A stretch of DNA of 58,235 nucleotides, filler included, from Sluysia triapertura (GCA_046118255.1; 4 parts of 4 records of this genome joined end to end with filler, not necessarily neighbours in it), one strand, 5' to 3'; shown: positions 43,857-58,235, counted from the first letter of the whole stretch. Notes: generated from the sequence alone by a model not told the origin. Numbers and translations: made by a program.

Positions 43857-43932
43857 CTTAATCAGTTGCGGAACCCCTGTCAACGTTCCAGGGAACCCTA
43901 GGGTTCCGCGGAACCCAGGTTGAAGACCCCTG
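43857..43932. mobile_element. hAT (Charlie/Buster-type) terminus inserted in an L2 fragment
   Basis: Reverse complement CAGGGGTCTTCAACCTGGGTTCCGCGGAACCC with repeated GGAACCC motifs. The adjacent 8-mer CCTTAAGA fits nnnTAnnn. Confidence 0.75.
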
Positions 43933-44110
43933 CCTTAAGATAAGATGCTACATGAGATCTTCTTCCCTCTTGGAAAATTAGTCTTGCTGCTTGATTAATT
44001 ATTAATTGTAATTTTTTCACTTTTCTATATAAAACTGAGTTAAAAATTTTACAGTTATAAATTAAGATTATGAGTGTTTTCAATTTTAAATTTTGCACAT
44101 AAAGCAAATA
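43933..44110 (-). mobile_element. L2 LINE ORF2 fragment
   Basis: YNCKIFNSV..KKLQLIINQAARLIFQEGRRSHVASYL fits the LQ..QN.AARLI...R..H motif. Confidence 0.75.
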
Positions 44111-47100
44111 AATTCGAAAATATGTATAAAATATTCATCTTAATAACAAATTTAATATATTAAATGATATGATATAATTTATAAAACACTCGAATGAGCA
44201 GAAATCCTTGGGTGTATAACTAATTTGTCGAATTAATTAACTAAAAATTACAAATTTTTAAAAATTGACTGAATAAAGCATATGACAAGATGGCTGCTAA
44301 AAATTAGACTAATAATTTGAATTATGTTTTCAAAATGGCGATTCTCATTAAACTGATGCTAGAATCGATGGAATGTTCTAGAAGCTTCTATTCTATCTTT
44401 AGAAGCGGTTTTTTTATAGAAATTTTATTTTCTTTTTTGGAAAATAAACATTTTAAAAGTATTTTTAGAGATTTATAAATAATATTAAAGCATTCTAACA
44501 CGTGTAGTTAAAAATGGTATAACTTATTTAAAGTTTTCGAACAATCAAAATAATCTTTCAAAAGTTATTATGTCTTTCGCGTTTGTTAATAAAATAACAT
44601 AAATTATTGAAGTATATTAATAAACAAATAACAAAAATGAAAAATAAAAGATATACAGAAAAGAATTTAGTGGCTAAACATCGAGAAAGTTTCGAGTTTG
44701 AATCATATGCAGTTCATTTAAAGTCTGAAAAGAACAATGGAAAGGAAATACCTAAGAGGAACTGATACCTCTATAATAAATAATGCTATCAAAGATTATC
44801 AGATGAATTACTACTGCATTATAATAATAATGTAATTTGTTACAAAGATAATCACAATAATGCATCATTTAATAGATGTGTTTAGATTAATATTTTCATA
44901 TAGATTAATAGGATCAATTTTTGCTGACAAAGTGAAACTATGCATCGATTTTCAAAATTTAATTTAAAATTTATTCTTTAATGAATATTTAACTCATTTT
45001 TTGAATTAAAAGCAAGGTATATATTTTATTTTTATAAATAACTTCATTTAATAATAATAGATGTTTATATTATTACTTTGTTGAATTATAATTTTTGTTA
45101 CTTTTAAAAGGTGATTGTAAAACAACATATTTGCATTATTTGTTGATTTTTGCAGAAATTTTTTTAGTGAAAATCGTCTCAAAAAAGAAAACATTGATTC
45201 ATAATATAATTTTGATAATTTGAAATAAAATGAAGACATTTAATTAAATAAATAAATAAGAATATTTAAAATGAGAAAACAATTTAAAGTTGACATAAGT
45301 TAAACATGTCAATAATTGTTTTATCGTCGATGAAGCAAAATGTTTATTAAATAAATATTCATAATAGCTTAAATTTAACGTCAATATTAAAATTTACAAT
45401 TTCATTATTAATTCTGATTTGTTTTGTCTTAAAATTGGTGATTTTAAAATATAAAACAATAACAATATAGTTCAAGTGTAATAAGTAAATGTGAAAATAC
45501 AAAACAAAATATGTGCAAATTATTTAAAATCAATAATTAAATAAGAATTACTTTAAATTTATAATTATCTTCGACAATTATATTTTCCATTTTAATTATG
45601 TAAAAATTTAAAAATTTAACTAATCCAAAACGTTGAAATTAAAAAAATTATATTAATAAATTAAATATTATTTTATAAAATATGTGTTTAAATAATACTT
45701 TAAAACATCTTTATAAGTGATTGCTTTAAGCGATTAATCATTTATTCAAAAGGCATTTTATCCATATGATAATGAAATATTTCAAAATCAAATATTTCAG
45801 ATGTCGTGAATCTTACGTATGGAATGGTGTTCCAGATAAATCAAATATCATAATTATTATGTATTATGGCTACTATTAGACTAAATTTTATTTTTCTCAT
45901 GCTTAGTTTGTAGATACTTTTAATCATGTATATATTTCTGAGTGTTTATCAGGCAATTATTTCTATTTTAATTTTAATTCAATTATTTATTTAATTTCAA
46001 TCAAGTCAACTTTTTTATTTACACTTAATTTTTTAGATTTTTCCTAATTGATACACCTTCTGTTCTAAAATGCAAGAAATGTATATGTAAGTGGAGTGCG
46101 AGAATAAAGCTTAAATAGTGAGTTCACCAACGTATTGGACTTACTAACTTAATGGCCAACCGTTGGATTTTTGACTTAAAATGGAGGTCAAGAAAGATTT
46201 TTCTTAGTCACTTTAATGCTCTATTATATTATACAATATTTTATTCAATGTCTAATCAGAAGTATATTAATTGAATCCTTTACTCAATTTTCAATAATAA
46301 CGTTGAACTGAATCAAAAATGCTATGCTTTAATAGTCACTGAAATTAATTTAAATGGTTACTATCAAATAATCACAATTAATATTAATAATAATGTAATT
46401 AATAATTTAGGGGACAATTGATTTTATGATTTTATATGATTTTAAAAAATATGAATACGAAGATTTTACTTCGGTTTGATTATACAAACCGTTTAAATAT
46501 TTGATGATTTTTCTTAGGTTCAATCTAAATGAACCTTTACTAATTTTACAAGAGTTTACTAAGGTTCGTTCAAGAACCTGATCAATTATTTTAAAATAAT
46601 AAATTAATAAATAAGGTCAAATTGAAAGTTTTATTATTACAATTATTTGTTACTACAATTATTATAATATGATAATATATATGCAATTTACAAAAGATTA
46701 TTCTTCCAATAATCTTGATAAAAATTTTAAAAAATAATTTTTCTCTGCTATTAATAAACAATAGCTTTAATTATGAATTCGATTTTTAGTCGATTTTAGT
46801 AAAGCAACTTCTAAATGTTGCTAAAAAATCTTATCATAAAAAACTAACGTTAATACTCGAAAGTTGCAAAAATTGAATTTGAAGAATTGAAAATGGTAGT
46901 GTTAATTGATGGCTGAAGTTGAATTGAATCGCATAATAGTACTTGTTTCACGAAATATGTTTAAGTCAAACTGAAAGCTATAAGTGGTAAGTTAAGTTGT
47001 GAATTAAGTTATGAATTTAGTTGTGAAAATGTTATAGAATGTCAATGTATTTATACTTATTTTGAAGGTCAATCAAGTTTTAAAACAAGGTTTTGATAGC

Positions 47101-47440
47101 AAATAAATTTAAATAATATTTTAATAATTTTAGTAATAATAATTTTATTTTACAAATTTTTACAATTATCAATAATAATATTTTAACAAATAATAATTAA
47201 TAATGATTTTATAAATAATTTTGTATAATAATAATTTCACTAATAAAATATAATAATGTTTAATAATAATAAAATGATAAAATATAATAATGTTCAATAA
47301 TAATAAAATAAAATTAAATATATACTAACTTAGAAGATGATATGATTTAAAATTTGAAATCCTTTTTTGAAATAATTATTTGAAACTAAATTAATTGAAA
47401 TATTTTAATTATTTTAAATGTTTAAATAAATTAGATATAA

Positions 47441-47530
47441 ATCTAAAGGTCATTAGCTTTACATAATTCTAAAGGTCATTGTTCTACATAAATCTAAATA
47501 AATCTAAAGGTCATTAGTCATTAGCTTTAC
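47441..47530 (+). promoter_or_regulatory. Three TCTAAAGGTCATT repeats (nuclear-receptor extended half-sites, NBRE-like) upstream of the RING exon
   Basis: AAAGGTCA at 47445, 47471 and 47506; TATA-like TATATAG at ~47560. Function is inferred only. Confidence 0.35.
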
Positions 47531-47755
47531 ACGATTAAGGTATAGGACTAAACAGTACATATATAGTAAAGTTACGAGTGATCGCTGTCGACGGTTATTT
47601 CCTGTCCAGCCGGTCACCTAACTTCGTAAACAACTGTTTATTGCTTTTCGCAGTTTATAGTACTGTACATACTTAAGTTCATAATTATATCATTTTTACT
47701 AATTAATTAATCAGCTAACTCTAAAATATTATATTTATTTTTCCTTTTTTAGAAT

Positions 47756-48210
47756 ATGCATTTCCATCGTTGTCCAATTTGTCAACACTCTATCCACAAA
47801 CATTTCATAAATACAAATCCTTGCTCACATAAATTCCACTTTAAATGTATTCTTAACTTCTTTCATTTCACTACTACAGATTAAATGAACTGCCAATTAT
47901 GCAGAACACCTGTAGAGGAAATTCATAATTATTATAAAGGCAAATATCAACTCATACGCTTTAGAAAAAATACCACATTATCTACATAATCAACATATTG
48001 AGGTACAAGAGGTGATAATTCATCGCCCAAATCAACTCAAGAAAAATAATAAACAGCATTTAATAACAATACCTCTTCCAAACTATCCTTCTGGTTTGAC
48101 AAAGTCCCAGAAGCATAACAGACGCGTCGTCAAATACGTCTTTATAAGAGAGCAGGATTATATAAGAAAAACAATGTGATTAATCCTTTCATCAAGAAGA
48201 ATCGTAATTA
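47756..48210 (+). pseudogene. RING-H2 finger gene remnant inside the TIR element
   Basis: After a strong acceptor (TTTTTCCTTTTTTAG, 47752): MHFHRCPICQHSIHKHFINTNPCSHKFHFKCILNFFHFTTTD*MNCQLCRTP, i.e. CxxC..CxHxxHxxC..CxxC. In-frame TAA at 47882 and later frameshifts. Confidence 0.8.
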
Positions 48211-48346
48211 AGGATATTTTTTTTAAAATATATAGGATAAAGTAATTAATTAAATAATGTATCATAAATAAAAAAAATAAACTATCGTTTAAATTATTTT
48301 ATGTATCAATTTTTTTTACTTCTTTAAAGTGTACTATTTTGTTTAG

Positions 48347-49716
48347 ACTGATCCAATTACTCACCCTCAAGCAAAAATCATAACGAATATCTCATCTTTT
48401 TACAATGCAATCGACCGATACTGTGGTCAAAATGACACCTACTACGTTTTTTAATTATAAAAACACCCCTAATTCTTTGAAATGTGAATTAAATGAAGAG
48501 TTTATCACACATTTTTAAAATAGATAAGTTAGAGGCTCCAACGGTATTAAACAATTTACAAGGCTACTCATTAGGTGATAAACCTGTCTTAATAGCAGCT
48601 GAAACCTTAAAATCACACGATTTGTTGATTTTAATCCATTGCAGATTAGAGTTAATAGTTTTAACTCTATATATAACCAGCGTTTCAGAAAAATGTCGAA
48701 TTTATGTGGATTCCAACGAACTACCATCAACTTTCGCCAACATATTTGCAAAAGAAGAAGAGAAATTAAACACCACAAAATATCCTTTGTTATGCGAAAC
48801 TGACATGGAAAGCCGATATAAGTGGGAAGAACGTGTAACTTTTACACACACGCCCCACATTTCAATAGCAGAAAAAACTGACCTGGTGTTTGTCGCAGTC
48901 CAGTTTGCACTTGATTTTAAGGACAAACATCAAATCATAAAGGCTTGCATGATGCCTTAGCACCAAAAATTTCATTGCACGGAACTTATAAAACCTCGAG
49001 TCAGAATTAAAAACTTCCTACCAATCTCAAGGAAGAAAAAGACATAAGTGAAATAAGAACATTTTGGACAGCATCATTTCACAATAAAATTATTGTTTCT
49101 TTTTGCCCAGGTTTAATTATCAACACTTTCAAGATTCCATATGGTTGGGTGAAAGGTATTGTCAACTTAACCTGAACCAACTTAGTATCATTTAATTCCT
49201 TAAATATGATTAGCAAAACAAGAAAAATTTTACAACTACTATATTCGCCACCTCCACGCTCTTTTACATGTGAACAATTGACACGAGATTCTATCTCAAT
49301 CTTTGACCTACTATCTGCAAAAGATGTGTCATTTTTTTCCATCAGTAATACAAAATAAAAATTTGGATATATTACCTTTTTCTCCCTCTTCTTCAAATAC
49401 TATCTCTAAAACATCACACCTACATATAAATTTGATACACCAATATTACATGACCACCTTAAAAAACAAAGACATTAAAAAATCTAAAATCAATTTGGAT
49501 GACATCAGAACAGATACGAAACAACAACAGCCCAAACTTCCAACAACCGATACAAGTAAAATCAATAGGAAGAGACGCTGTTCCGTCGATGATTCTGAAG
49601 AAGAATCCCTACAAGCAGATTTTAACCATATTTTCGGCGACCTCGGCAATTTATTATCAGATAATGAATTCTTCACATGCGAAGATGTACAGGACATAAT
49701 CGATCTAACATTTTGA
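48347..49716 (+). pseudogene. ~450-codon disrupted gene: unknown N-terminus, DEDDh-exonuclease-like fold, NLS, acidic tail with SIM
   Basis: Acceptor TTTTGTTTAG at 48346. ORF-track pieces 48493-48960 and 49303-49716 join through a few stops and frameshifts; the frame ends RKRR...EDVQDIIDLTF*. Confidence 0.6.
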
Positions 49717-51779
49717 TTGGAGACCAATCTTTTGATCCCCGGGAGTATTTGTGGTAATCATCTATTTTATCAATATATTTAATTTTGTGAATCATTGACT
49801 ATGACTATTTTAAAATCATTTTTCATTGACTATTTTTATCGATATATTTAATTTGATTAACAATGTATTTGTTAATGTATGATTTAATTTAAATTTTGTA
49901 TTTATAACATTTTAAAATTTTGATGGATATTTATTTTTCAATTTTTGTTAGATATTTATGAAATTTATAATTGGATAATTATGAAATGTAATTAATTAAC
50001 GGTAAGTCATATTTTAATATTATTATTTTTAATTTTAATTTTCTAAATTTTAAATTTAAATGTTTTAATTTTTCAATATTTTAAATTTTTAAAAAATTTT
50101 GTTTTAACCTTAATAAAAATTATGTCAAGTTTGACAGCTAGAAAACTATTTAAGATACCACAATCTTCATAAAACTACACAATAATGATAAAGTTTTAAG
50201 ATTCAATTTTGAAGATTTCAAAAGAAGATTTTGGTTCATACTTTCAAAAAACAAATACGATTTTTATCCTGTCAACGTTAGCTTATTTTTATTAAGGGTG
50301 ATATTATTTAATATCAAAGCAAAATTAAGGAAAATTTATTAAGTTAATATTAGACTATTGTAAAATCTTACTTAAATTTATATTTGATATTAAAAAATAC
50401 ATCTGTAATTTATGCAAAACTTATATTTTTATTGTTTGATTGTTGTATTTTTCTTTGTATAAATCTTTGTATAAATAAATATTCAAGAAAGACAAAAGTG
50501 TTGTGTTATAATATAAGAAATAAAATAATTTTTGATTAAAGAATTAAAGAATCCTTATTGTAGGATTCATGCAAAATCTTTTTTAAGATAAATAAGATAG
50601 ACTAAAAATTACCTCCAGAATTTCAGTTAAGGAGTCGATTAAAGCATTTTGAGACTTTTATTAAAGCATCTTTCTTTTACGTTAAAATCCAACGGTTGGC
50701 CCTCACTGGTAAGTCCAGTACGTTGGTGAACTCACAGCTTTAAATTAATTTTGTTTTTATTCTAACATTAATTTTATTCCCACATTACTATTACTATTAT
50801 TATTGTAAATACATAACAGAATAATACTCGAAAATAATATCAAATAAAATTTTTGAATAAATTGCTAAAATGAAACGTTTTATTATCGAATTTTTGAAAA
50901 ATAAAATTATTTTAATTTAATAAGAAGTCTAAATTTACAACGATTAAATTTACAACGGTTCAATATTATAATCGATTAGGTAAATAAAATCATTTTAATT
51001 TTACATTGTATAGGAATAATATGAAATCTAAATTTATAAACACTAAATCTTGATGATTATGATAATAAAATCATTTCCAATTGAGATTTAAATGAAAAAA
51101 TAAATTGCCGGTTTGATTCCCAAAGAATGTTTTAATGATATTTGTGCGAGAATGTTTTATTGTAAACCTTAAGAGTGATTTGATAGTGAAGAAGTATAAA
51201 ACGAGTATCGACCGTATTACCATGGTGAGGTCCAATGCTTATTCTGAGGCAATATATATATAATTATGAATAAAAATATAAATTAACTATTAATTCTATT
51301 TTTTGCTGAAATTATATTAGAAAGAGGTATTTATTTATTATTAAAAAAGGAATCCCCTATTGTTCTAAATAAATATCTCAAGGAATTCTCCTATTTATTT
51401 ATTTAAAATAATTTTTTGAGAATTCTCCGTTTGTTACAACTATTTTTGGGGAATTTCATTTTAAAATCATTTTAGAGGATCATTCTGAGAAAACAGAAAT
51501 TGAATTTTTTAATTGTGTATGTTGCGTCAGCCCTGGTTTTTGTTAATTTTGCGATTTAAATCATTTTTATTTAATTCATTTGTATTATTGTTAAAATAAA
51601 AACAATTTGTATTTGATTTTGCAATTATTAAATTATTGAGTTATTTTTATTAATTTAAATTGAAAAAGGTAACAGTTTGGTTTCAATAAATATCATCGTT
51701 AAAGTAAGAGAATTTGTGATAATTTGCATTTGATTTTATAATTATTAAATTTATTGAGATTCTCTTAAGTAGGCCTATT

Positions 51780-52440
51780 CTACTTTAAAACAGTCATTAT
51801 TAAACTTACAAATAAAACGAGGAAAAACACTAAAAGGTACTCTGAAGATATAAGTTTAGCTTTCATTTTTAAGGTAAAAGAAAGACATATTCCCTTTTGT
51901 TACTTGGTTAAATAAAAATACTTTTCATTTTTTTTTCATCATTCGATTTATCGGCATTTTGCAGTGTTTACATTTTCCACCAATGTTTACTTATCCGGTC
52001 ACAATATTACTAAAGTCTTTACCGTTATAGAAGCATTACAAATGAGGTACAAGCACTTTGTAAAGACATACATCACTCCTTTTATACATTGAAATAGTAC
52101 CTTTTGAAGTTTTCGGTATACTTGTGCACTGCGTGAAGTGAACTTAAGCTATTCGCTGCTAAACCTAAATTGTACCTAAATTGTATGAAGTTATTCGCTT
52201 TGCCATTTCTGTTTTGAGTGTTATTGTTTATCTAAGTTTTTTTACATGTATAAAAATCAAACACGAGTACACTCGATATCCTTTTCCTTATTTGCTCACG
52301 TTTAAGCAAAAAAAACAAATGAATCACACAAATAGATGAAAGAGTAAAAATACTAAAAAAAACGGATTACAATTTTCTGCAAATTTGCAAAAGCTCGTTA
52401 CTTACTGCTCACTTACTTACTTACTAGTTACTCACTTAGA
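51780..52440 (-). mobile_element. Possible hAT remnant with BED-finger fragment
   Basis: NIGGKCKHCKMPI on the minus strand (~51950-51990); clustered TTACT/GTTACT subterminal-type repeats at 52395-52438. Confidence 0.35.
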
Positions 52441-53439
52441 TTCTGTTTCGCCCCAGAGATAACGGAATTATGCAATATTGAACAACTTGACTCTGAGTTT
52501 ATCTTCAACATCTCTCATCAACAAGCAGTGTAGTTTTGTAGTATACTTTTTGTAGAAATAATTTATTTGCAGCTTTTGTTCAAGTATTTACATTGGCATA
52601 TTTAAATTTGTGGCCACGAAAAGTTTCCAAGCTCCACAAGGTTGTATCCTATAATACACTGAAAGTATAACGAGTATCTTCGTGGTTGGTAGCGAATAGG
52701 TTAGTAAAATATAATTACTATTCAACCAACAATTTTATTTTTCAAATATTTTAATCGAATTTTCAAAATTTTCATTTAATTATATAGACATCTATTTCAT
52801 AGTTGAAACATGCTACCAGAAATGTAACGAGTGTTGTGCCAAGCTCGTGTCTCAGAGAGGGCCAAGACCTCGATCAGGTGCCTCCTAATCACCACCATCA
52901 ATTGTCAAAAAGTACTATACATTGACTATGCATTTTGCACCTACCCCTCCTTTTGTTCCGCCACTGAATCTGACTACTGCCACACTAATTTCATCGTATT
53001 CTAGTCAACTGAAAATATCCAAACCACCTTGTCAAAACCCTCTCGCACAAGTAAAAAAATTACAAAATATAAAAATTCAATCCCACTCAATAATACCAAA
53101 AATGCGTTACCACCACTAACAATCACTCTAAGCACACATTTCGAAAAAAAGTATTTAATTTGATTTTCAAAATAACACAATTAATCACTAAATTGCAAAA
53201 AAGATTACGAATTGAGGCAGGCACGCTTACATAATACACACCACTTAGTAATTAATATAATGTATTTTCACTGACTTAATAAGACTTATTGTTCCATAAT
53301 ATAATAAATCCGTAAAAAGTAAACCAAGTACAAATATAAACACAATAATATATTTAATTATAAATATTAAGTACACCAACAACATAACTATATATCATGA
53401 TTATGAGTAGAAGGATTCATTTAAAGTAACAATAGTAGC

Positions 53440-53440
<1 letters not shown>

Positions 53441-53489
<49 letters not shown>
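53441..53489. repeat. (AAT)n microsatellite
   Basis: Directly visible; a further AAT/GAT tract lies at 53851-53900. Confidence 0.95.
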
Positions 53490-53491
<2 letters not shown>

Positions 53492-54709
53492 AAAATCCAA
53501 AATGAACTATTTTTATTTCCATTTGCTCAGTAAACACGTATGAAAAACAACACATTCACTTAAATAATAAATTAATAAATCAATCCCAAACACAATTATT
53601 TAAATTATTTATACTACTTACAAAGTTTAGTATTACGTTTACTTACAAATATAAATTAGAAATATTAACGGTAAAATTTTGCAAAATTTTTTTTGAAATT
53701 ATTGTTTAAAATTAAATTAAAATTAAAAGTATTAGTTCTTTTTTGTATACGTTTTTGCAAAATTAGAAATAAGTTATTTAAATATTTTGTCAAAACATTT
53801 AATAAGATATTAAATAAATTTTATAGCAAATAACAACATATCAGTATAGAATAATAATAATGATAATAATAATAATGATAATAATAATAATAATAATGAT
53901 ATTAAAGTCAGATTTTATACAAAAATATTTGCAGAATATAATGCAGAAATGACCAACAAACAAATATAATCCATAGCATGCAAAACATCTTGGAAGGATA
54001 TTATAATAGTTATAATTGGATAAAATAAATATTCAATTATCGTTGTTCTAATAATAATTACGAAAAACGTAAACACGCACGCACACATTTTCTAACATTG
54101 TCAAATTTTAATTTAATCTTTTTGTTTTAATTTGAATACAATTAAAAAAGAATGTAGGATGAACTTCAGAAAAACAATCGGGACAAAAATAAAAAAACTA
54201 AAATTATCAAAGATTTCAAAGGAGATTGATAATAAAATGTTAAAGCACGGTAATAAAACGAAAAGAAAATTCAAACATACAAACGAATACATATTTCAAT
54301 TATCAGTGTTATATCAAAACTGTATTAATTAATGAATACTGGATTAAATTGATATTTTTCAGTTAAAAACTAAGAACTTGCGATAAGTAATTTAAAAATA
54401 TAATTTCATGTTATTTGATAATGATTATTATTATTAATAAAAGTTGTTTTAATGAAACAATTCAACAAGTTTTTCTTCACTATCATTAATTAATCATCAT
54501 TTACATATGACCAATAATCTTTTTATTTTATACTTAATAACGTATCCAATAAATAAAATAAAAGTAAAAGCACACACGCAAATATTGTTGCCAATTAACT
54601 AGGAACTACGGGGCCATGAAAAAAGGAAAGAAACAAGTGATGATTCAGATAAATGGGGCTCGTCGTCAACTTTTTGTATGACTGTTCAATATCGTAAATA
54701 TTGTCAATA

Positions 54710-54865
54710 TTACATCGGTGCTGCAGCTCCGTCTAAAGTGGTATTCAAATTTGACGAAGAGGGTTGCTGATTCTGCGAAGTTAACTCAGAACCATGGTTT
54801 GTACTGCCATCATTTCCTGTTAAAAGACTGTATGGATTTGAAGCAACTGCTGCATTTGCGTTATC
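54710..54865 (-). CDS. Probable terminal coding exon of an unidentified gene
   Basis: Strong acceptor TTATTCTGTTTTCAG, locally higher GC, frame DNANAAVASNPYSLLTGNDGSTNHGSELTSQNQQPSSSNLNTTLDGAAAPM*. AATAAA on the minus strand near 54525. Phase is assumed. Confidence 0.5.
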   Translation of the reverse strand, partial: DNANAAVASNPYSLLTGNDGSTNHGSELTSQNQQPSSSNLNTTLDGAAAPM

Positions 54866-55932
54866 CTGAAAACAGAATAAATAAATATTTAAACAATTAA
54901 TTCAGACATTTTCTTCTACTATTTCCCTATCCCTCGTTATGAAACAAGTTAGAAAGGACCCGAAAGTTGGACTCAAGTTTTTAAATGTGGTTCAGATTGA
55001 AATTGTTCCTGCAGCTGTAACGGAATCAGAAGGAATAGATTCTGACATTCTCGATGAATAAAAAATAATTAATCTTTATCTTTATTGAAGGAAAATAACT
55101 TTGTAAAAAATGGGTATTCCCCGGGGAAATAAAAGAAGTTTTACAGTATTATTAGGGAGCTCAATAAAATCAGAATTTCGGCGTAGAACCTTTAACAGAA
55201 ACATAACATTCGAATTTTTAAATCCAAAGGGTCTTTGGTCGTAACTTAGGGTTCCCAAAAACAAAACAATAATATGCTTTATCTTTATTAAAATCAAGAT
55301 TATGTTTAGTTATTTATTTTAAATTTAAACATCTTTACTTAATATAACATTATTGATGTCTTCAAATTCTGCTAACGCATTCTTCTCTTGAATCCTTCGA
55401 ATTCAAAATATCTCTATTTAAGATAACATTATCAATCTTCAAAATATGCTCATGTATTTGCGAAATTACACAGAACCAATGTTATAAAATTTCCATTCTT
55501 AATTTTAGACATGAATTCACAATTAAAGCAAATTCTCTCTCTCACTCTCTCTGACTATATTAAATGATATTGAACTTCTGTATGTTGAATTTATTAAATG
55601 AACGATGATGACTCTATGAAAATAGACTGCTATGAAAGTTTATGATTGAAAATTTATAATGAAAATTCACTATATAAATTCACTACTATAAATAGTCTGA
55701 ACTTAACATTTAACATTTAAACACCAACAAGATTTGAGATCAAAAATTATTGACCAGATGAAAACTAAGTAGTGCAAATGTTTCAAAAGGAGTTTAAGCA
55801 AGCAGTTAAGAACTGTTATGATGTAACAAGAAAAGGTTCTATGTTATTATTCAATTATGAATGTGTGAAGAGAATTGTATTATCAAGCACTTGATCGGAA
55901 CCGTAACAACCTCAATTTAGACAATGTAATTG

Positions 55933-55998
55933 TTGTAAATTGGTATTGCTAAAATTGTAAATTGGTATTGCTAAAATTGTAAATTGGTATTGCTAAAA
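55933..55998. repeat. 22-bp tandem repeat x3 (TTGTAAATTGGTATTGCTAAAA) with degenerate copies downstream
   Basis: Directly visible. Confidence 0.9.
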
Positions 55999-56256
55999 TA
56001 TATTGCTTAATAAATTGTTATTGCTAAATTAATGTAAAATTGTAAATTATAAAGTGTTTTGCTAAATTAATATTTGTAAATTAAATATAATTAATTGTTA
56101 ATATTTGTAAATTGTTAAAGAAGGCAACGAAATATAATAAAATCGTATTTATTTGTATTTATCATTTTTTATTTGTGTTATTATTAAATTACATAAATTA
56201 ATATTTCACAAAAAGTACATTTAATAGTTTAATATACAAAAGTACAAATACAAAAG

Positions 56257-56558
56257 TTAGTTATTTTTAAAATATACTATGTTTATAAATTATTATTAGT
56301 TAGTTTAATACATATAATCATTTATTCTATGTACATAAATTATAATTTAGTTATTAAAATATACTATGTTTATAAATTATTATTAGTTAGTTTAATACAT
56401 ATAATCATTTATTCTATGTACATAAATTATNNNNNNNNNNNNNNNNNNNNNNNNNNNNNNNNNNNNNNNNNNNNNNNNNNNNNNNNNNNNNNNNNNNNNN
56501 NNNNNNNNNNNNNNNNNNNNNNNNNNNNNNAATTTAGTTATTAAAATATACTATGTTT
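56257..56558. repeat. 87-bp tandem repeat spanning a gap
   Basis: Unit AATTTAGTTATTAAAATATACTATG...GTACATAAATTAT occurs twice and restarts after the Ns. Confidence 0.85.
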
Positions 56559-56579
56559 ACAAAAAAAATCAGAAAATGT

Positions 56580-57930
56580 TATGATTATATCAGTTGGATG
56601 GTTGCAATTTTTAATCATTTGCTATAATAATGTCATATTTGATGTATATCAGTAGTTATTTAAAAGTAATTAATGATCATTTTCAGGTGAGGTAATACAA
56701 CTGATACTTTTTCACTTGACGAAATTTTAGACTATATAATGAATTATTAATAAGTTTCAATAAAACCGGAATAACTTTTGTGAAAATGGATCAATTTGGT
56801 TGGTACTTGTTTTTGATATTTCCGAGATAATCTTTACTAAATCATCTTCATAAATTTTCTTAAATTCAATTTTATTTAAATTCTTCTTTTTTTGGATTTC
56901 TAATTTAACATTTAATTTATTATTGCCACTTCATATATTTTCTATTTTCGATACAAAATATTTAAAAGGCATTTGACATAATTTTATCATTTTATAAATA
57001 ATTTTCATTCTTTTTATTAAATAATTTATTTAATAGTTTATAAATACCTTTAATATTTATTGAGATATTATTGGTCTTATTATAAAAGTCCACTATTTGT
57101 TTCTAATAGCTTGGAAGAAGGTATTACGAAATTTTATGCATTCTTTCTTTGTTTTTTTACTTTTTCATTACTTTTCTTTGCATTGTTTTATTTTTCGTAA
57201 CTAATTAATATCTAGATTTCTAATTAACACATGGTTTGCAACAAAATTTTTCATTTTCAGGTGGATGCTTGTCTAAATAAAATGATAGCATTCTGTTGTT
57301 TAATTCATTTAATGTATCTATATTGTTTCTAAAAGTTATTATTTCTTCAACTTTAGTCCATAAGTGTTTACTCAACTCTTCAATGTCAACTTTTGATAAA
57401 TTTCTATATTCGATCTTTTGTAATTTTATATTTTACTTTAATGATCAGATAAATTCTCACACTTATGAGTTTTAAAATTTACGCCGTTCATTAAATTGAA
57501 TATATTTAGTAATCCGACGAATGTTCTGCATTTTTCATTCATTTTTATATAAAAATCTCCTACTATGGAAACTTCTTTGGCTTTTTTCAAAATAATATCA
57601 AAATAATCATAAAATTCATCTGAAAATACTATGTATAACAATTAATAATATTGATTTATTTGATAATTTTAAATTTTTAAAATTTTAAATGGTCGAATGA
57701 TTGACATGTAACTGAATGGTATTGTAACACCATTTGACCCTATTCGACATTTATGAAAAAATCAATATCTATTTAAGTGAAATAATGAATTAAATATTTT
57801 ATCATTTTTGATCCAAGTTTCTATTAAACAGAAAGTGTCAGTGCGATTATGTTACATAATCTCAATAATTTCCATAATTTTATTTTGAATAGACCTAACC
57901 ATTTTGAATACCAAATTTAATATAATCTTT
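56580..57930 (-). mobile_element. Decayed L2/CR1 LINE ORF2 (APE endonuclease to start of RT)
   Basis: VRSIQNKIMEII..DTFCLIETWI (~57810-57900), IVGDFYIKMN..LLNIFNLMNGVNFKTHKCENLSD, and LLNNY..SN near 56650. Confidence 0.8.
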
Positions 57931-58235
57931 TTTTGCAGTTTGTTCACAATTTTTATATAACCTTAGTTTTTGATTTATAGTCATAATTTTTCTTAGTTTT
58001 TAAAATTTCCGTATGTATTGGACATTGGTGAATTAGGTACATGATTAAAATCATTATGACACAATTTATGCACTTGTAGAACTGCTCATTTTATTTATTT
58101 TGATAAATTTTCCCTCTATTGTTTTCGAACAATAAACAGATCGGACCATTTAATTTAATTGTTATATGGATTCAAAAATGAACATGGAAGAAAATATTAA
58201 TTGTATTGTTAAAAAGTGTAAATATCAATTAAATA

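What the first reader, a model, noticed from the sequence alone, without database searches (positions are those of the whole stretch)
46115..50739. Transposase-less TTAA/TIR element carrying a RING-H2 + exonuclease-like + SIM cargo
Seen: ~60-bp imperfect TIRs with TTAA on both sides enclose two acceptor-led plus-strand coding blocks, and I find no DDE transposase motif. Known: TTAA duplication with purine-purine termini (AG..CT, intact at the right end only) fits Kolobok rather than piggyBac (CC..GG); RING plus SIM is the logic of SUMO-targeted ubiquitin ligases (RNF4, herpes ICP0), and SUMO pathways silence transposons. Inference: this may be a non-autonomous element family carrying its own anti-silencing or regulatory gene. 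This copy is pseudogenised.
Basis: partly seen in the sequence, partly recalled or inferred. Interest (0 to 1): 0.75.

Follow-up and report, generated by a model that had tools for sequence, protein, structure and literature searches.

The report
Dead DNA transposon with RING-finger gene
This is one old, broken copy of a cut-and-paste DNA transposon whose only gene encodes a RING-finger protein with no detectable relatives; its ends look more like an 8-9-bp-duplication (hAT/Mutator-type) element than the TTAA/Kolobok type proposed, and the proposed anti-silencing role cannot be tested from this one copy.

Summary
The inverted repeats are real: 46118-46181 and 50675-50735 match at 54 of 61 aligned bases, far above shuffles, and the core occurs nowhere else in the piece. 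TTAA does stand on both sides. But it lies inside a longer direct repeat, AGCTT(T)AAAT, that abuts the repeat core, so an 8-9-bp target duplication (hAT/Mutator-like) explains the ends better than TTAA/Kolobok.

Inside is one plus-strand gene made of two GC-richer blocks (0.32-0.33 against about 0.2), split by a 170-bp intron-like gap. Block 1 is a true RING-H2 finger with all eight ligands, cut by a TAA stop. Block 2 is about 455 codons and ends in RKRR, an acidic serine run and IIDLT, a SUMO-interaction-type motif. The gene carries at least 3 in-frame stops and 4 frameshifts.

No Pfam transposase or exonuclease family matches any frame. No relative turned up among 1.84 billion protein representatives, PDB, metagenome or viral contigs. 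So "exonuclease-like" and "transposase-less" are both unproven: block 2 shows only a by-eye RNase H-like pattern, which would fit a transposase as well as an exonuclease.

Interest is moderate to low.

The parts
46108..46116 (.). Left flanking direct repeat AGCTTAAAT (candidate 8-9-bp target-site duplication).
   Evidence: best gapped match of the two 12-nt flanks scores 7, P about 0.018 against random 12-mer pairs from the piece.
46118..46181 (+). Left terminal inverted repeat. Core GTGAGTTCACCAACGTATTGGACTTAC, then a palindromic box CCAACCGTTGG (46156-46166). With 46116-46117 the end reads TAGTG, which fits the hAT terminal motif YARNG.
   Evidence: (I2).
46182..47755 (.). AT-rich (GC 0.21) non-coding interior with short tandem repeats. 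It includes three 20-bp repeats ATAAATCTAAAGGTCATTAG at 47437-47517 and a GC-richer, CpG-containing patch at 47555-47645, just upstream of the gene.
   Evidence: (D9). No ORF with a Pfam match.
47756..48176 (+). Block 1 (exon-like, GC 0.32), starting at an ATG 3 nt after TTTTTCCTTTTTTAG. It holds a RING-H2 finger: C6-x2-C9-x13-C23-x-H25-x2-H28-x2-C31-x14-C46-x2-C49. Breaks: TAA at 47882-47884, TAA at 47987-47989, and a frame change near 47990-48000.
   Evidence: (zf-RING_2 E 1.3e-5, zf-C3HC4 E 2e-4).
48177..48346 (+). 170-bp intron-like gap (GC 0.165) that ends in TTTTGTTTAG.
48347..49716 (+). Block 2 (exon-like, GC 0.33, about 455 codons), read through frames 2/0/1/0/1. In-frame TAG at 48958 and TGA at 49173. 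The longest intact piece is 48493-48957 (155 aa). No detectable relatives.
48589..48930 (+). By-eye RNase H-like pattern in the 155-aa piece: LIAAET on a predicted strand, CETD 68 residues later after a fourth strand, and ALDFKDKH 37 residues after that. This is a lead only. It fits either a DDE transposase core of the C/DxxH group or DEDD exonuclease motifs.
   Evidence: (very low-confidence model, pLDDT 36, strands 32-39, 42-51, 54-62, 96-101). No statistical support.
49567..49713 (+). C-terminal tail: basic RKRR (49567-49578), acidic/serine run SVDDSEEES (49582-49608), and a SIM-type core IIDLT (49696-49710). Stop codon at 49714-49716.
49717..50674 (.). AT-rich (GC 0.19) non-coding interior with low-complexity repeats.
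50675..50735 (-). Right terminal inverted repeat: the same core with 1 mismatch in 27 nt, and the palindromic box at 50689-50699.
50736..50745 (.).

Best explanation
This is a single, old, inactive copy of a cut-and-paste (class II, TIR) DNA transposon of about 4.62 kb. It inserted as one unit and duplicated about 8-9 bp of target (GCTT(T)AAAT). That places it with the hAT/Mutator-type group and not with Kolobok or piggyBac.

Its about 62-bp ends carry two CCAAC..GTTGG-type palindromic boxes, which are the likely transposase-binding sites (inference).

The element holds one two-exon gene of its own. Exon 1 is a RING-H2 finger. Exon 2 is about 455 codons with no detectable relatives and ends in a basic patch, an acidic serine run and a SIM-type IIDLT.

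I take this to be the element's own protein and not a host regulator. About even odds say exon 2 hides a divergent RNase H-like catalytic core, which would make the protein the transposase with an N-terminal RING, as in the RING-ORF-plus-transposase layout of aphid Mutator families. Otherwise it is a transposition accessory or host-interaction factor with SUMO-targeted E3-ligase logic.

Since insertion the gene has decayed neutrally, with at least 3 in-frame stops and at least 4 frameshifts, at roughly the rate seen in the TIRs (about 11% mismatch between arms). This copy does nothing today.

Shown: the TIRs, the flank repeat, the RING, the tail motifs, the decay, and the absence of known families. 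Inferred: the superfamily, the binding sites, and the role of exon 2.
For: - TIR pair significance and uniqueness.
- The direct repeat AGCTT(T)AAAT abuts the TIR core on both sides. Under a TTAA model the shared AGC and AT outside the TTAA, and the non-pairing terminal 3-4 nt, are left unexplained.
- The left end reads TAGTG, matching YARNG. hAT has 8-bp TSDs (PMC3014272). MULE TSDs are 8-11 bp, and Spectre has an 8-bp TSD with a 74-bp TIR (PMC6446971).
- There is a single gene in the centre. GC is 0.32-0.33 in the two blocks, against 0.165 in the 170-bp gap and about 0.2 elsewhere. Acceptor-like sites precede both blocks.
- RING-H2.
- Layout precedent: Ghost has a 420-bp RING ORF plus a 1373-bp transposase ORF. 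Here the figures are 421 bp, a 170-bp gap and 1370 bp.
- Weak strand pattern beta-beta-beta-(alpha)-beta, with an acidic residue after the fourth strand.
- No second TIR pair or other ORF lies inside the element.
Against: - Only one copy is available, so TSD length, TIR consensus and family membership rest on a single decayed example with an indel in the putative TSD.
- No Pfam model of hAT, MULE, P, piggyBac, PIF, Tc1/mariner, Merlin or RNase_T matches any stop-free segment of 30 aa or more, in any frame, even at E<=10.
- phmmer of the intact 155-aa piece against 1.84 billion representatives found only two spurious repeat proteins. Published aphid Ghost/Spectre transposases should be in that library.
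- The right end reads CTGTG, one mismatch to YARNG.
- The D1-to-E span would be short for a hAT.
- The RNase H-like reading is by eye only. The structure model is unusable (pLDDT 36; Foldseek gave nothing).
Confidence: 0.5

Rival explanations
1. This is a non-autonomous TTAA/Kolobok-type element family that carries, instead of a transposase, a RING + SIM (SUMO-targeted ubiquitin-ligase-like) gene. The gene would serve the element as an anti-silencing or regulatory factor, and this copy is pseudogenised.
For: - TTAA lies on both sides, within 4 nt of the TIR core. Chance P is about 0.011.
- The right end would start 5'-AG, the RR terminus of Kolobok (PMC9587614).
- RING-H2 is confirmed.
- IIDLT after an acidic run is rare by chance.
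- No recognisable transposase is present.
- There is a precedent for TE-borne anti-silencing factors: VANC of VANDAL MULEs (PMC6446971).
Against: - The TTAAs sit inside a longer flank repeat, and the outermost 3-4 nt of the two ends do not pair under this model.
- Only one SIM-type motif is present. Known STUbLs use several (own knowledge).
- About 400 residues between the RING and the SIM are unexplained.
- No other copy, no intact ORF and no selection test is available.
- Absence of a Pfam hit does not show absence of a transposase, and I know of no Pfam model for Kolobok cores (own knowledge).
Confidence: 0.15
2. A KolobokD-like element remnant. Block 2 is the DEDDh (DnaQ/TREX/ERI1/exuperantia-like) exonuclease that the KolobokD lineage is known to encode beside its transposase, and the transposase gene has been lost from this copy.
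For: - KolobokD families in arthropods, molluscs and cnidarians encode such an exonuclease (PMC9587614).
- By eye, motifs with DEDDh-like spacing can be read: AAET for DxET, VQFALD for HNxxFD 104-106 residues later, and HNKIIV for Hx4D about 56 residues later.
- TTAA is present.
Against: - Only 3 of the 5 catalytic residues are present.
- Pfam RNase_T and related models give nothing even at E<=10.
- phmmer against PDB, which holds TREX1 and ERI1, finds nothing at E<=10.
- The TSD evidence argues against Kolobok.
- No RING is reported for KolobokD proteins in the paper's text.
Confidence: 0.08
3. A non-autonomous element that captured a host gene or gene fragment (Pack-MULE or hAT-transduplication style). 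The RING gene would be a decayed copy of a host E3-ligase gene with no role for the element.
For: - Gene capture by MULEs is well documented (PMC6446971).
- The gene has an intron-like gap, as a captured genomic fragment would.
- No transposase family is detectable.
Against: - No parent gene or any relative turned up among 1.84 billion representatives, or in two word searches. A host E3 gene from an annotated genome should have appeared.
- The gene looks complete from ATG to stop, whereas captures are usually fragments.
- Capture of whole genes is rare in animals (own knowledge).
Confidence: 0.15
4. The two repeats are ends of separate short insertions (or one end pair of an unrelated MITE family) that happen to bracket an unrelated decayed gene. 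There would then be no 4.6-kb element.
For: Only one copy could be examined, so the pairing cannot be checked elsewhere.
Against: - No further copy or partner of either TIR lies within the 14-kb piece.
- The two arms are in exact inverted orientation.
- The sequences just outside them form a direct repeat, as expected from one insertion event.
- There is no inner TIR pair.
Confidence: 0.05

Closest known systems
Ghost and Spectre Mutator-like elements of aphids, spiders and cnidarians (Dupeyron et al. 2019, PMC6446971)
   Same: - Two-ORF layout with a small RING-finger ORF upstream of a larger ORF. Ghost has 420 bp plus 1373 bp; here it is 421 bp plus 1370 bp with a 170-bp gap.
- Spectre has an 8-bp TSD and 74-bp TIRs; here the TSD is about 8-9 bp and the TIRs about 62 bp.
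- Element size is about 4.6-5 kb.
- Both occur in AT-rich invertebrate-type sequence.
   Different: - The large ORF here gives no Pfam MULE hit.
- It gives no phmmer hit to any protein in 1.84 billion representatives.
- Homology to Ghost/Spectre transposases is therefore not supported.
- No TIRs were found for Ghost, so ends cannot be compared.
hAT superfamily transposons (8-bp TSD, YARNG termini; PMC3014272)
   Same: - A candidate 8-bp TSD, GCTTAAAT.
- The left end reads TAGTG.
- A single gene of about 600 codons with an N-terminal zinc finger.
- Spacing of about 68 residues between the two putative first acidic positions.
   Different: - No hAT dimerisation domain (Pfam PF05699) and no BED finger; a RING stands in its place.
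- The TIR is longer than usual.
- The right end has one mismatch to YARNG.
- The long acidic C-terminal tail is atypical.
Kolobok superfamily, including KolobokD with a DEDDh exonuclease accessory (Kojima and Bao 2022, PMC9587614)
   Same: - TTAA is present beside both ends.
- The right end could start with RR.
   Different: - The TTAA is embedded in a longer flank repeat, and the terminal nucleotides do not pair under that model.
- No exonuclease or Kolobok transposase similarity is detectable.
- A RING is not described for Kolobok proteins in the paper's text.
SUMO-targeted ubiquitin ligases (RNF4, Slx5/8, Degringolade; herpesvirus ICP0). Comparison from own knowledge.
   Same: A RING finger plus a [VI][VI]DLT SIM core next to an acidic/serine run.
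   Different: - Only one SIM-type motif.
- The RING is at the extreme N-terminus and the SIM at the extreme C-terminus, with about 550 residues of unknown sequence between them.
- No sequence homology.
- The gene sits inside a transposon and is broken.
TE-borne host-interaction factors: VANC of VANDAL MULEs (PMC6446971); Ulp1-type SUMO protease domains in Kaonashi MULEs and Zisupton (own knowledge)
   Same: Transposon-encoded proteins that act on host silencing or on the SUMO pathway, and not on DNA cleavage.
   Different: Those are different protein folds, shown or inferred in plants and fish. Nothing here has been tested functionally.

Membership tests
Kolobok | TTAA target-site duplication directly flanking the element | tested here: inconclusive
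   TTAA is present on both sides but lies 3 and 4 nt from the conserved TIR core and inside a 9-10-nt direct repeat. One copy only.
Kolobok | Termini 5'-RR ... YY-3' (PMC9587614) | tested here: not met
   Under the TTAA model the right end is AG..(CT) but the left end is AT. The outermost 3-4 nt (ATA against AGCT) do not pair.
Kolobok | Kolobok DDE transposase, or a known accessory (a DEDDh exonuclease in KolobokD) | tested here: inconclusive
   No Pfam RNase_T or any nuclease or transposase hit and no PDB hit. No Kolobok profile was available to test against.
piggyBac | TTAA TSD with CCC..GGG termini and a DDE_Tnp_1_7 transposase | tested here: not met
   The termini are (A/T)GTGAG, and there is no Pfam hit.
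hAT | 8-bp TSD | tested here: inconclusive
   GCTTAAAT against GCTTTAAA(T): identical once a single extra T is removed.
hAT | Terminal motif YARNG | tested here: inconclusive
   The left end is TAGTG and fits. The right end is CTGTG, one mismatch. Definition from PMC3014272.
hAT | hAT C-terminal dimerisation domain / BED finger | tested here: not met
   No PF05699 or BED hit in any frame. A by-eye ISKTRKIL..P..CEQL resemblance is not statistically supported.
Mutator-like (Ghost/Spectre) | 8-11-bp TSD and TIRs of tens to hundreds of bp | tested here: met
   An 8-9-nt flank repeat and 61-64-bp TIRs, with the caveat that only one copy was seen.
Mutator-like (Ghost/Spectre) | MULE DDE transposase domain | tested here: not met
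   No PF10551, PF00872 or other hit. No phmmer hit at E<=1e-3 in 1.84 billion representatives.
RING-H2 E3 ligase finger | C-x2-C-x(9-39)-C-x(1-3)-H-x(2-3)-H-x2-C-x(4-48)-C-x2-C | tested here: met
   C6, C9, C23, H25, H28, C31, C46 and C49 are present, with a TAA stop at codon 43. Pfam zf-RING_2 scores E 1.3e-5 on the truncated piece, 25.8 bits against a cut-off of 27.3.
SUMO-targeted ubiquitin ligase (STUbL) | RING plus functional SUMO-interaction motifs (usually several) | tested here: inconclusive
   There is one [VI][VI]DLT core beside an acidic run. SUMO binding is not testable with these tools.
DEDDh exonuclease | Exo I (DxE), Exo II (D) and Exo III (Hx4D) motifs; RNase_T-type domain | tested here: not met
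   By eye, 3 of 5 residues stand at plausible spacing, but there is no Pfam or PDB sequence match.

The most novel reading that the evidence does not exclude
A family of DNA transposons carries its own SUMO-targeted ubiquitin-ligase-like protein, with an N-terminal RING-H2 and a C-terminal SIM. The protein is either fused to or replaces the transposase. The element would use it to remove SUMO-marked silencing factors from its own chromatin, making it a transposon counterpart of herpesvirus ICP0.
Probability: 0.1. Interest if true: 0.75.

Novelty: new variant of a known kind. Interest (0 to 1): 0.33.

Why it matters
If intact relatives exist, they would show a cut-and-paste transposon whose own protein joins a RING E3-ligase finger to a SUMO-interaction motif. 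SUMO-dependent heterochromatin formation is a main route of transposon silencing in animals. A transposon-borne SUMO-targeted ligase would therefore be a direct counter-defence, so far known from DNA viruses and not from transposons.

If exon 2 proves to be a transposase core, the element would be a further case of RING-bearing transposases, next to RAG1 and some aphid Mutator elements. It would also give the Ghost-type layout its missing ends.

As it stands, this is one dead copy with an orphan ORF: a useful seed for a genome-wide search, not a result in itself.

Tried and rejected
**Alternative genetic codes.** I tried tables 6, 4, 10 and 15. In DNA this AT-rich, table 6 opens long ORFs in all frames, and the frameshifts and a TGA remain. 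The gene is broken under any code.

**Homology searches that found nothing**
- Word search of the 155-aa and 144-aa pieces.
- Full HMMER scan of 1.84 billion representatives. The two hits are repeat proteins and spurious.
- PDB phmmer.
- Metagenome and viral contig scans, by TIR pattern and by protein.
- ESM Atlas. It gave a weak TPP_enzyme_M look-alike at 0.91 with low shared features, and nothing for the 60-aa piece.
- Rfam and tRNA scan.
- tblastn of all pieces against the rest of the 14-kb piece.

**Structure.** A single-sequence AlphaFold model had pLDDT 36, and Foldseek on it was meaningless.

**Ideas dropped**
- Nested TIRs or LTRs around the gene: none.
- Subterminal ACGT-motif enrichment: none.
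- Literature search for the TIR sequence: none.
- My first impression that the flanks hold LINE relics. It was not supported by Pfam or by a protein search, so I withdraw it. The organism was not identified.

- A read-through of the whole broken gene, since only its stop-free pieces could be searched by reference.
- A direct comparison with published Ghost, Spectre or Kolobok sequences, which I could not bring in by reference.


Full report
**What was examined.** Only the piece 43857-58235 is genome, and all work was kept inside it. The DNA is very AT-rich, with GC of 0.17-0.33 in 500-bp windows. The organism could not be identified.

**The ends.** The inverted repeats are real.
- The repeat finder reports arms at 46103-46144 and 50709-50750 (I2).
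- A local alignment extends the match to 46118-46181 against the reverse complement of 50675-50735. That gives 54 matches, 7 mismatches and 3 gap columns, with a score of 75 against 29 +/- 4 for shuffles.
- The 27-nt core GTGAGTTCACCAACGTAYTGGACTTAC occurs exactly twice in the whole window, with none expected.
- Each arm also holds the palindrome CCAAC(C/G)GTTGG, which also occurs only there.
- No inner inverted-repeat pair brackets the gene; everything else reported is AT-rich low-complexity matching.

**The target duplication.** The conserved TIR core, however, starts at 46118 and ends at 50735.

Under a TTAA model the element would begin ATA-GTGAG and end CTCAC-AGCT. These outermost 3-4 nt do not pair with each other, although the next 27 nt differ at only one position.

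The sequence outside the core reads AGCTTAAAT on the left (46108-46116) and AGCTTTAAAT on the right (50736-50745), the same string apart from one T. Random 12-mer pairs from this piece reach that gapped score in 1.8% of trials. TTAA within 4 nt of both cores arises by chance in 1.1%. The two events are nested, not independent.
- A 4-bp TSD leaves the shared AGC and AT, and the unpaired tips, unexplained.
- An 8-bp TSD (GCTTAAAT) or a 9-bp one, with a single T indel and one terminal mismatch, explains all of it.

By my rough reckoning this favours the longer TSD by one to two orders of magnitude (inference, from one copy). With 46116-46117 included, the left end reads TAGTG. That fits the hAT motif YARNG; hAT elements make 8-bp TSDs (PMC3014272). 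The right end reads CTGTG, one mismatch. Mutator-like elements make 8-11-bp TSDs, and the aphid family Spectre has an 8-bp TSD with 74-bp TIRs (PMC6446971). Kolobok is defined by TTAA and 5'-RR..YY-3' termini (PMC9587614), which fits poorly here.

**The gene.** Two plus-strand blocks stand out by composition. GC is 0.32 for 47756-48176 and 0.33 for 48347-49716. The 170 bp between them are at 0.165 and the rest of the element at 0.19-0.21. Each block follows a polypyrimidine tract plus AG: TTTTTCCTTTTTTAG before an ATG at 47756, and TTTTGTTTAG before 48347.

*Block 1* is a RING-H2 finger with all eight ligands at canonical spacing: C6, C9, C23, H25, H28, C31, C46 and C49. Pfam scores the 42 residues before the stop at E 1.3e-5 for zf-RING_2, and similarly for other RING models. 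A TAA at 47882-47884 cuts the finger before its last ligand pair.

*Block 2* has to be read through several frames:
- frame 2 from 48347;
- possibly frame 0 for 48384-48515;
- frame 1 for 48493-48957, a 155-aa piece that is the longest intact stretch;
- a TAG at 48958;
- frame 0 for 49011-49355, with a TGA at 49173;
- frame 1 for 49282-49713.

Alternative genetic codes do not rescue the gene.

The degree of decay is what neutral drift would give, judged against the roughly 11% mismatch between the two TIR arms (inference).

*The tail* reads RKRR (49567-49578), SVDDSEEES (49582-49608) and ...DVQDIIDLTF-stop, with IIDLT at 49696-49710. [VI][VI]DLT is the classical SUMO-interaction core (own knowledge: PIAS and RNF4 SIMs). 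It occurs only this once in 28,754 residues of six-frame translation of the piece. The motif is really there and is unlikely to be chance, but it is a single motif.

**What block 2 is.** This could not be settled.
- Every stop-free segment of 30 aa or more in all six frames of the element was scanned against Pfam. Only the RING families appear.
- Even at E<=10 the block-2 pieces match nothing. There is no hAT, MULE, P, piggyBac, PIF, Tc1/mariner or Merlin transposase, and no RNase_T or other exonuclease.
- Two word searches returned nothing.
- A full HMMER pass over 1.84 billion representatives returned only two repeat proteins, which I take as spurious.
- PDB sequences and metagenome and viral contigs returned nothing. 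The ESM Atlas gave nothing usable: a weak TPP_enzyme_M look-alike for the 155-aa piece and nothing for the 60-aa piece.
- A single-sequence AlphaFold model is unusable at pLDDT 36, and a Foldseek search with it is noise.

By eye, the 155-aa piece shows hydrophobic strands at residues 32-39, 42-51 and 54-62, then a helix-like stretch, then a strand at 96-101 followed by D104. A further strand at 131-140 is followed by D141. That order is the RNase H-like pattern, and it can be read in two ways.
- As DEDDh exonuclease motifs: AAET for DxET, VQFALD, and later HNKIIV, with 3 of 5 catalytic residues kept.
[quoted passage not shown] Here the spacings are 68 and 37 residues; in the P element they are 73 and 36.

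A resemblance of ISKTRKIL..P..TCEQL to the hAT C-terminal motif is also by eye only, and Pfam does not support it. I treat all of this as a lead, not a finding. 'Transposase-less' is thus unproven. What is shown is that no known transposase family is detectable.

**Comparison with known elements.** Two published cases bear directly on the finding.

First, Dupeyron et al. (PMC6446971) describe the aphid, spider and cnidarian Mutator clades Ghost and Spectre. The most complete Ghost element has a 420-bp ORF with a RING finger and a transposase ORF at 602-1974 (1373 bp) on a 4.9-kb scaffold, and no ends were found for it. Spectre has zinc-finger and transposase ORFs, an 8-bp TSD and 74-bp TIRs, and one copy carries a RING. 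The layout here (421 bp, a 170-bp gap, 1370 bp, about 62-bp TIRs, an 8-9-bp TSD, 4.6 kb) is strikingly similar. Homology fails the test, though. Ghost and Spectre transposases align with MULE DDE domains, and several are UniProt or RefSeq proteins. Yet neither the Pfam MULE model nor the 1.84-billion-protein scan sees block 2. I therefore name them as the closest architecture, not as the family.

Second, Kojima and Bao (PMC9587614) show that Kolobok lineages carry accessory nucleases, including a DEDDh exonuclease in KolobokD of arthropods, molluscs and cnidarians. The end structure and the lack of any exonuclease match argue against it.

**Verdict.** The object is one dead copy of a TIR DNA transposon with a single two-exon gene for a RING-H2 protein that has an orphan second exon and a SIM-type tail.

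Confidence in each part:
- That it is one element inserted as a unit: about 0.9.
- That the TSD is 8-9 bp and not TTAA: about 0.7.
- Whether the protein is the transposase itself (about 0.45), an element-borne accessory or host-interaction factor (about 0.3), or a captured host gene (about 0.15) remains open.

The anti-silencing idea is attractive. SUMO-dependent silencing of transposons, viral STUbLs such as ICP0, and transposon-borne SUMO proteases are all known (own knowledge). Here it rests on two short motifs in a pseudogene. They remain the decisive steps.

The broken gene was searched only as stop-free pieces given by reference. Published Ghost, Spectre and Kolobok sequences could not be brought in by reference and were not compared by computation.

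Noticed in passing
window 47437-47517: Three copies of a 20-bp unit, ATAAATCTAAAGGTCATTAG, lie 240-320 bp upstream of the RING ATG (two identical, one 85%). Each contains AAAGGTCA, which matches the monomeric nuclear-receptor (NR4A/NBRE-type) half-site as I recall it. They could be a regulatory module of the element's promoter, or transposase-binding subterminal repeats.
   Followed up: no
window 47555-47645: A GC-richer patch (GC 0.42, 6 CpG in 91 bp) sits in otherwise 20% GC DNA, just upstream of the gene and bracketed by TTAA...TTAA. It may be a core promoter or a small foreign fragment. There is no Rfam match.
   Followed up: partly
window 55933-55999 and 56267-56430: A perfect 22-bp x3 tandem repeat (TTGTAAATTGGTATTGCTAAAA) and an 87-bp x1.9 repeat at 100% identity. 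The second runs straight into the 100-N gap at 56431-56530, so a longer satellite array probably caused the assembly gap.
   Followed up: no
window 52857-53356 and 54357-55856: Two GC-richer stretches (0.29-0.32), the first with a strong C-over-G skew of -0.41. They hold short ORFs but match no Pfam family in any frame, so they may be exons or decayed repeats of unknown kind. My first impression of LINE relics at 43901-44134 and 57223-57641 was not supported by Pfam or by a protein search.
   Followed up: partly
window 53440-53489 and 53850-53905: Two (ATA)n/(AAT)n microsatellites about 400 bp apart; the first has 16.7 perfect units.
   Followed up: no
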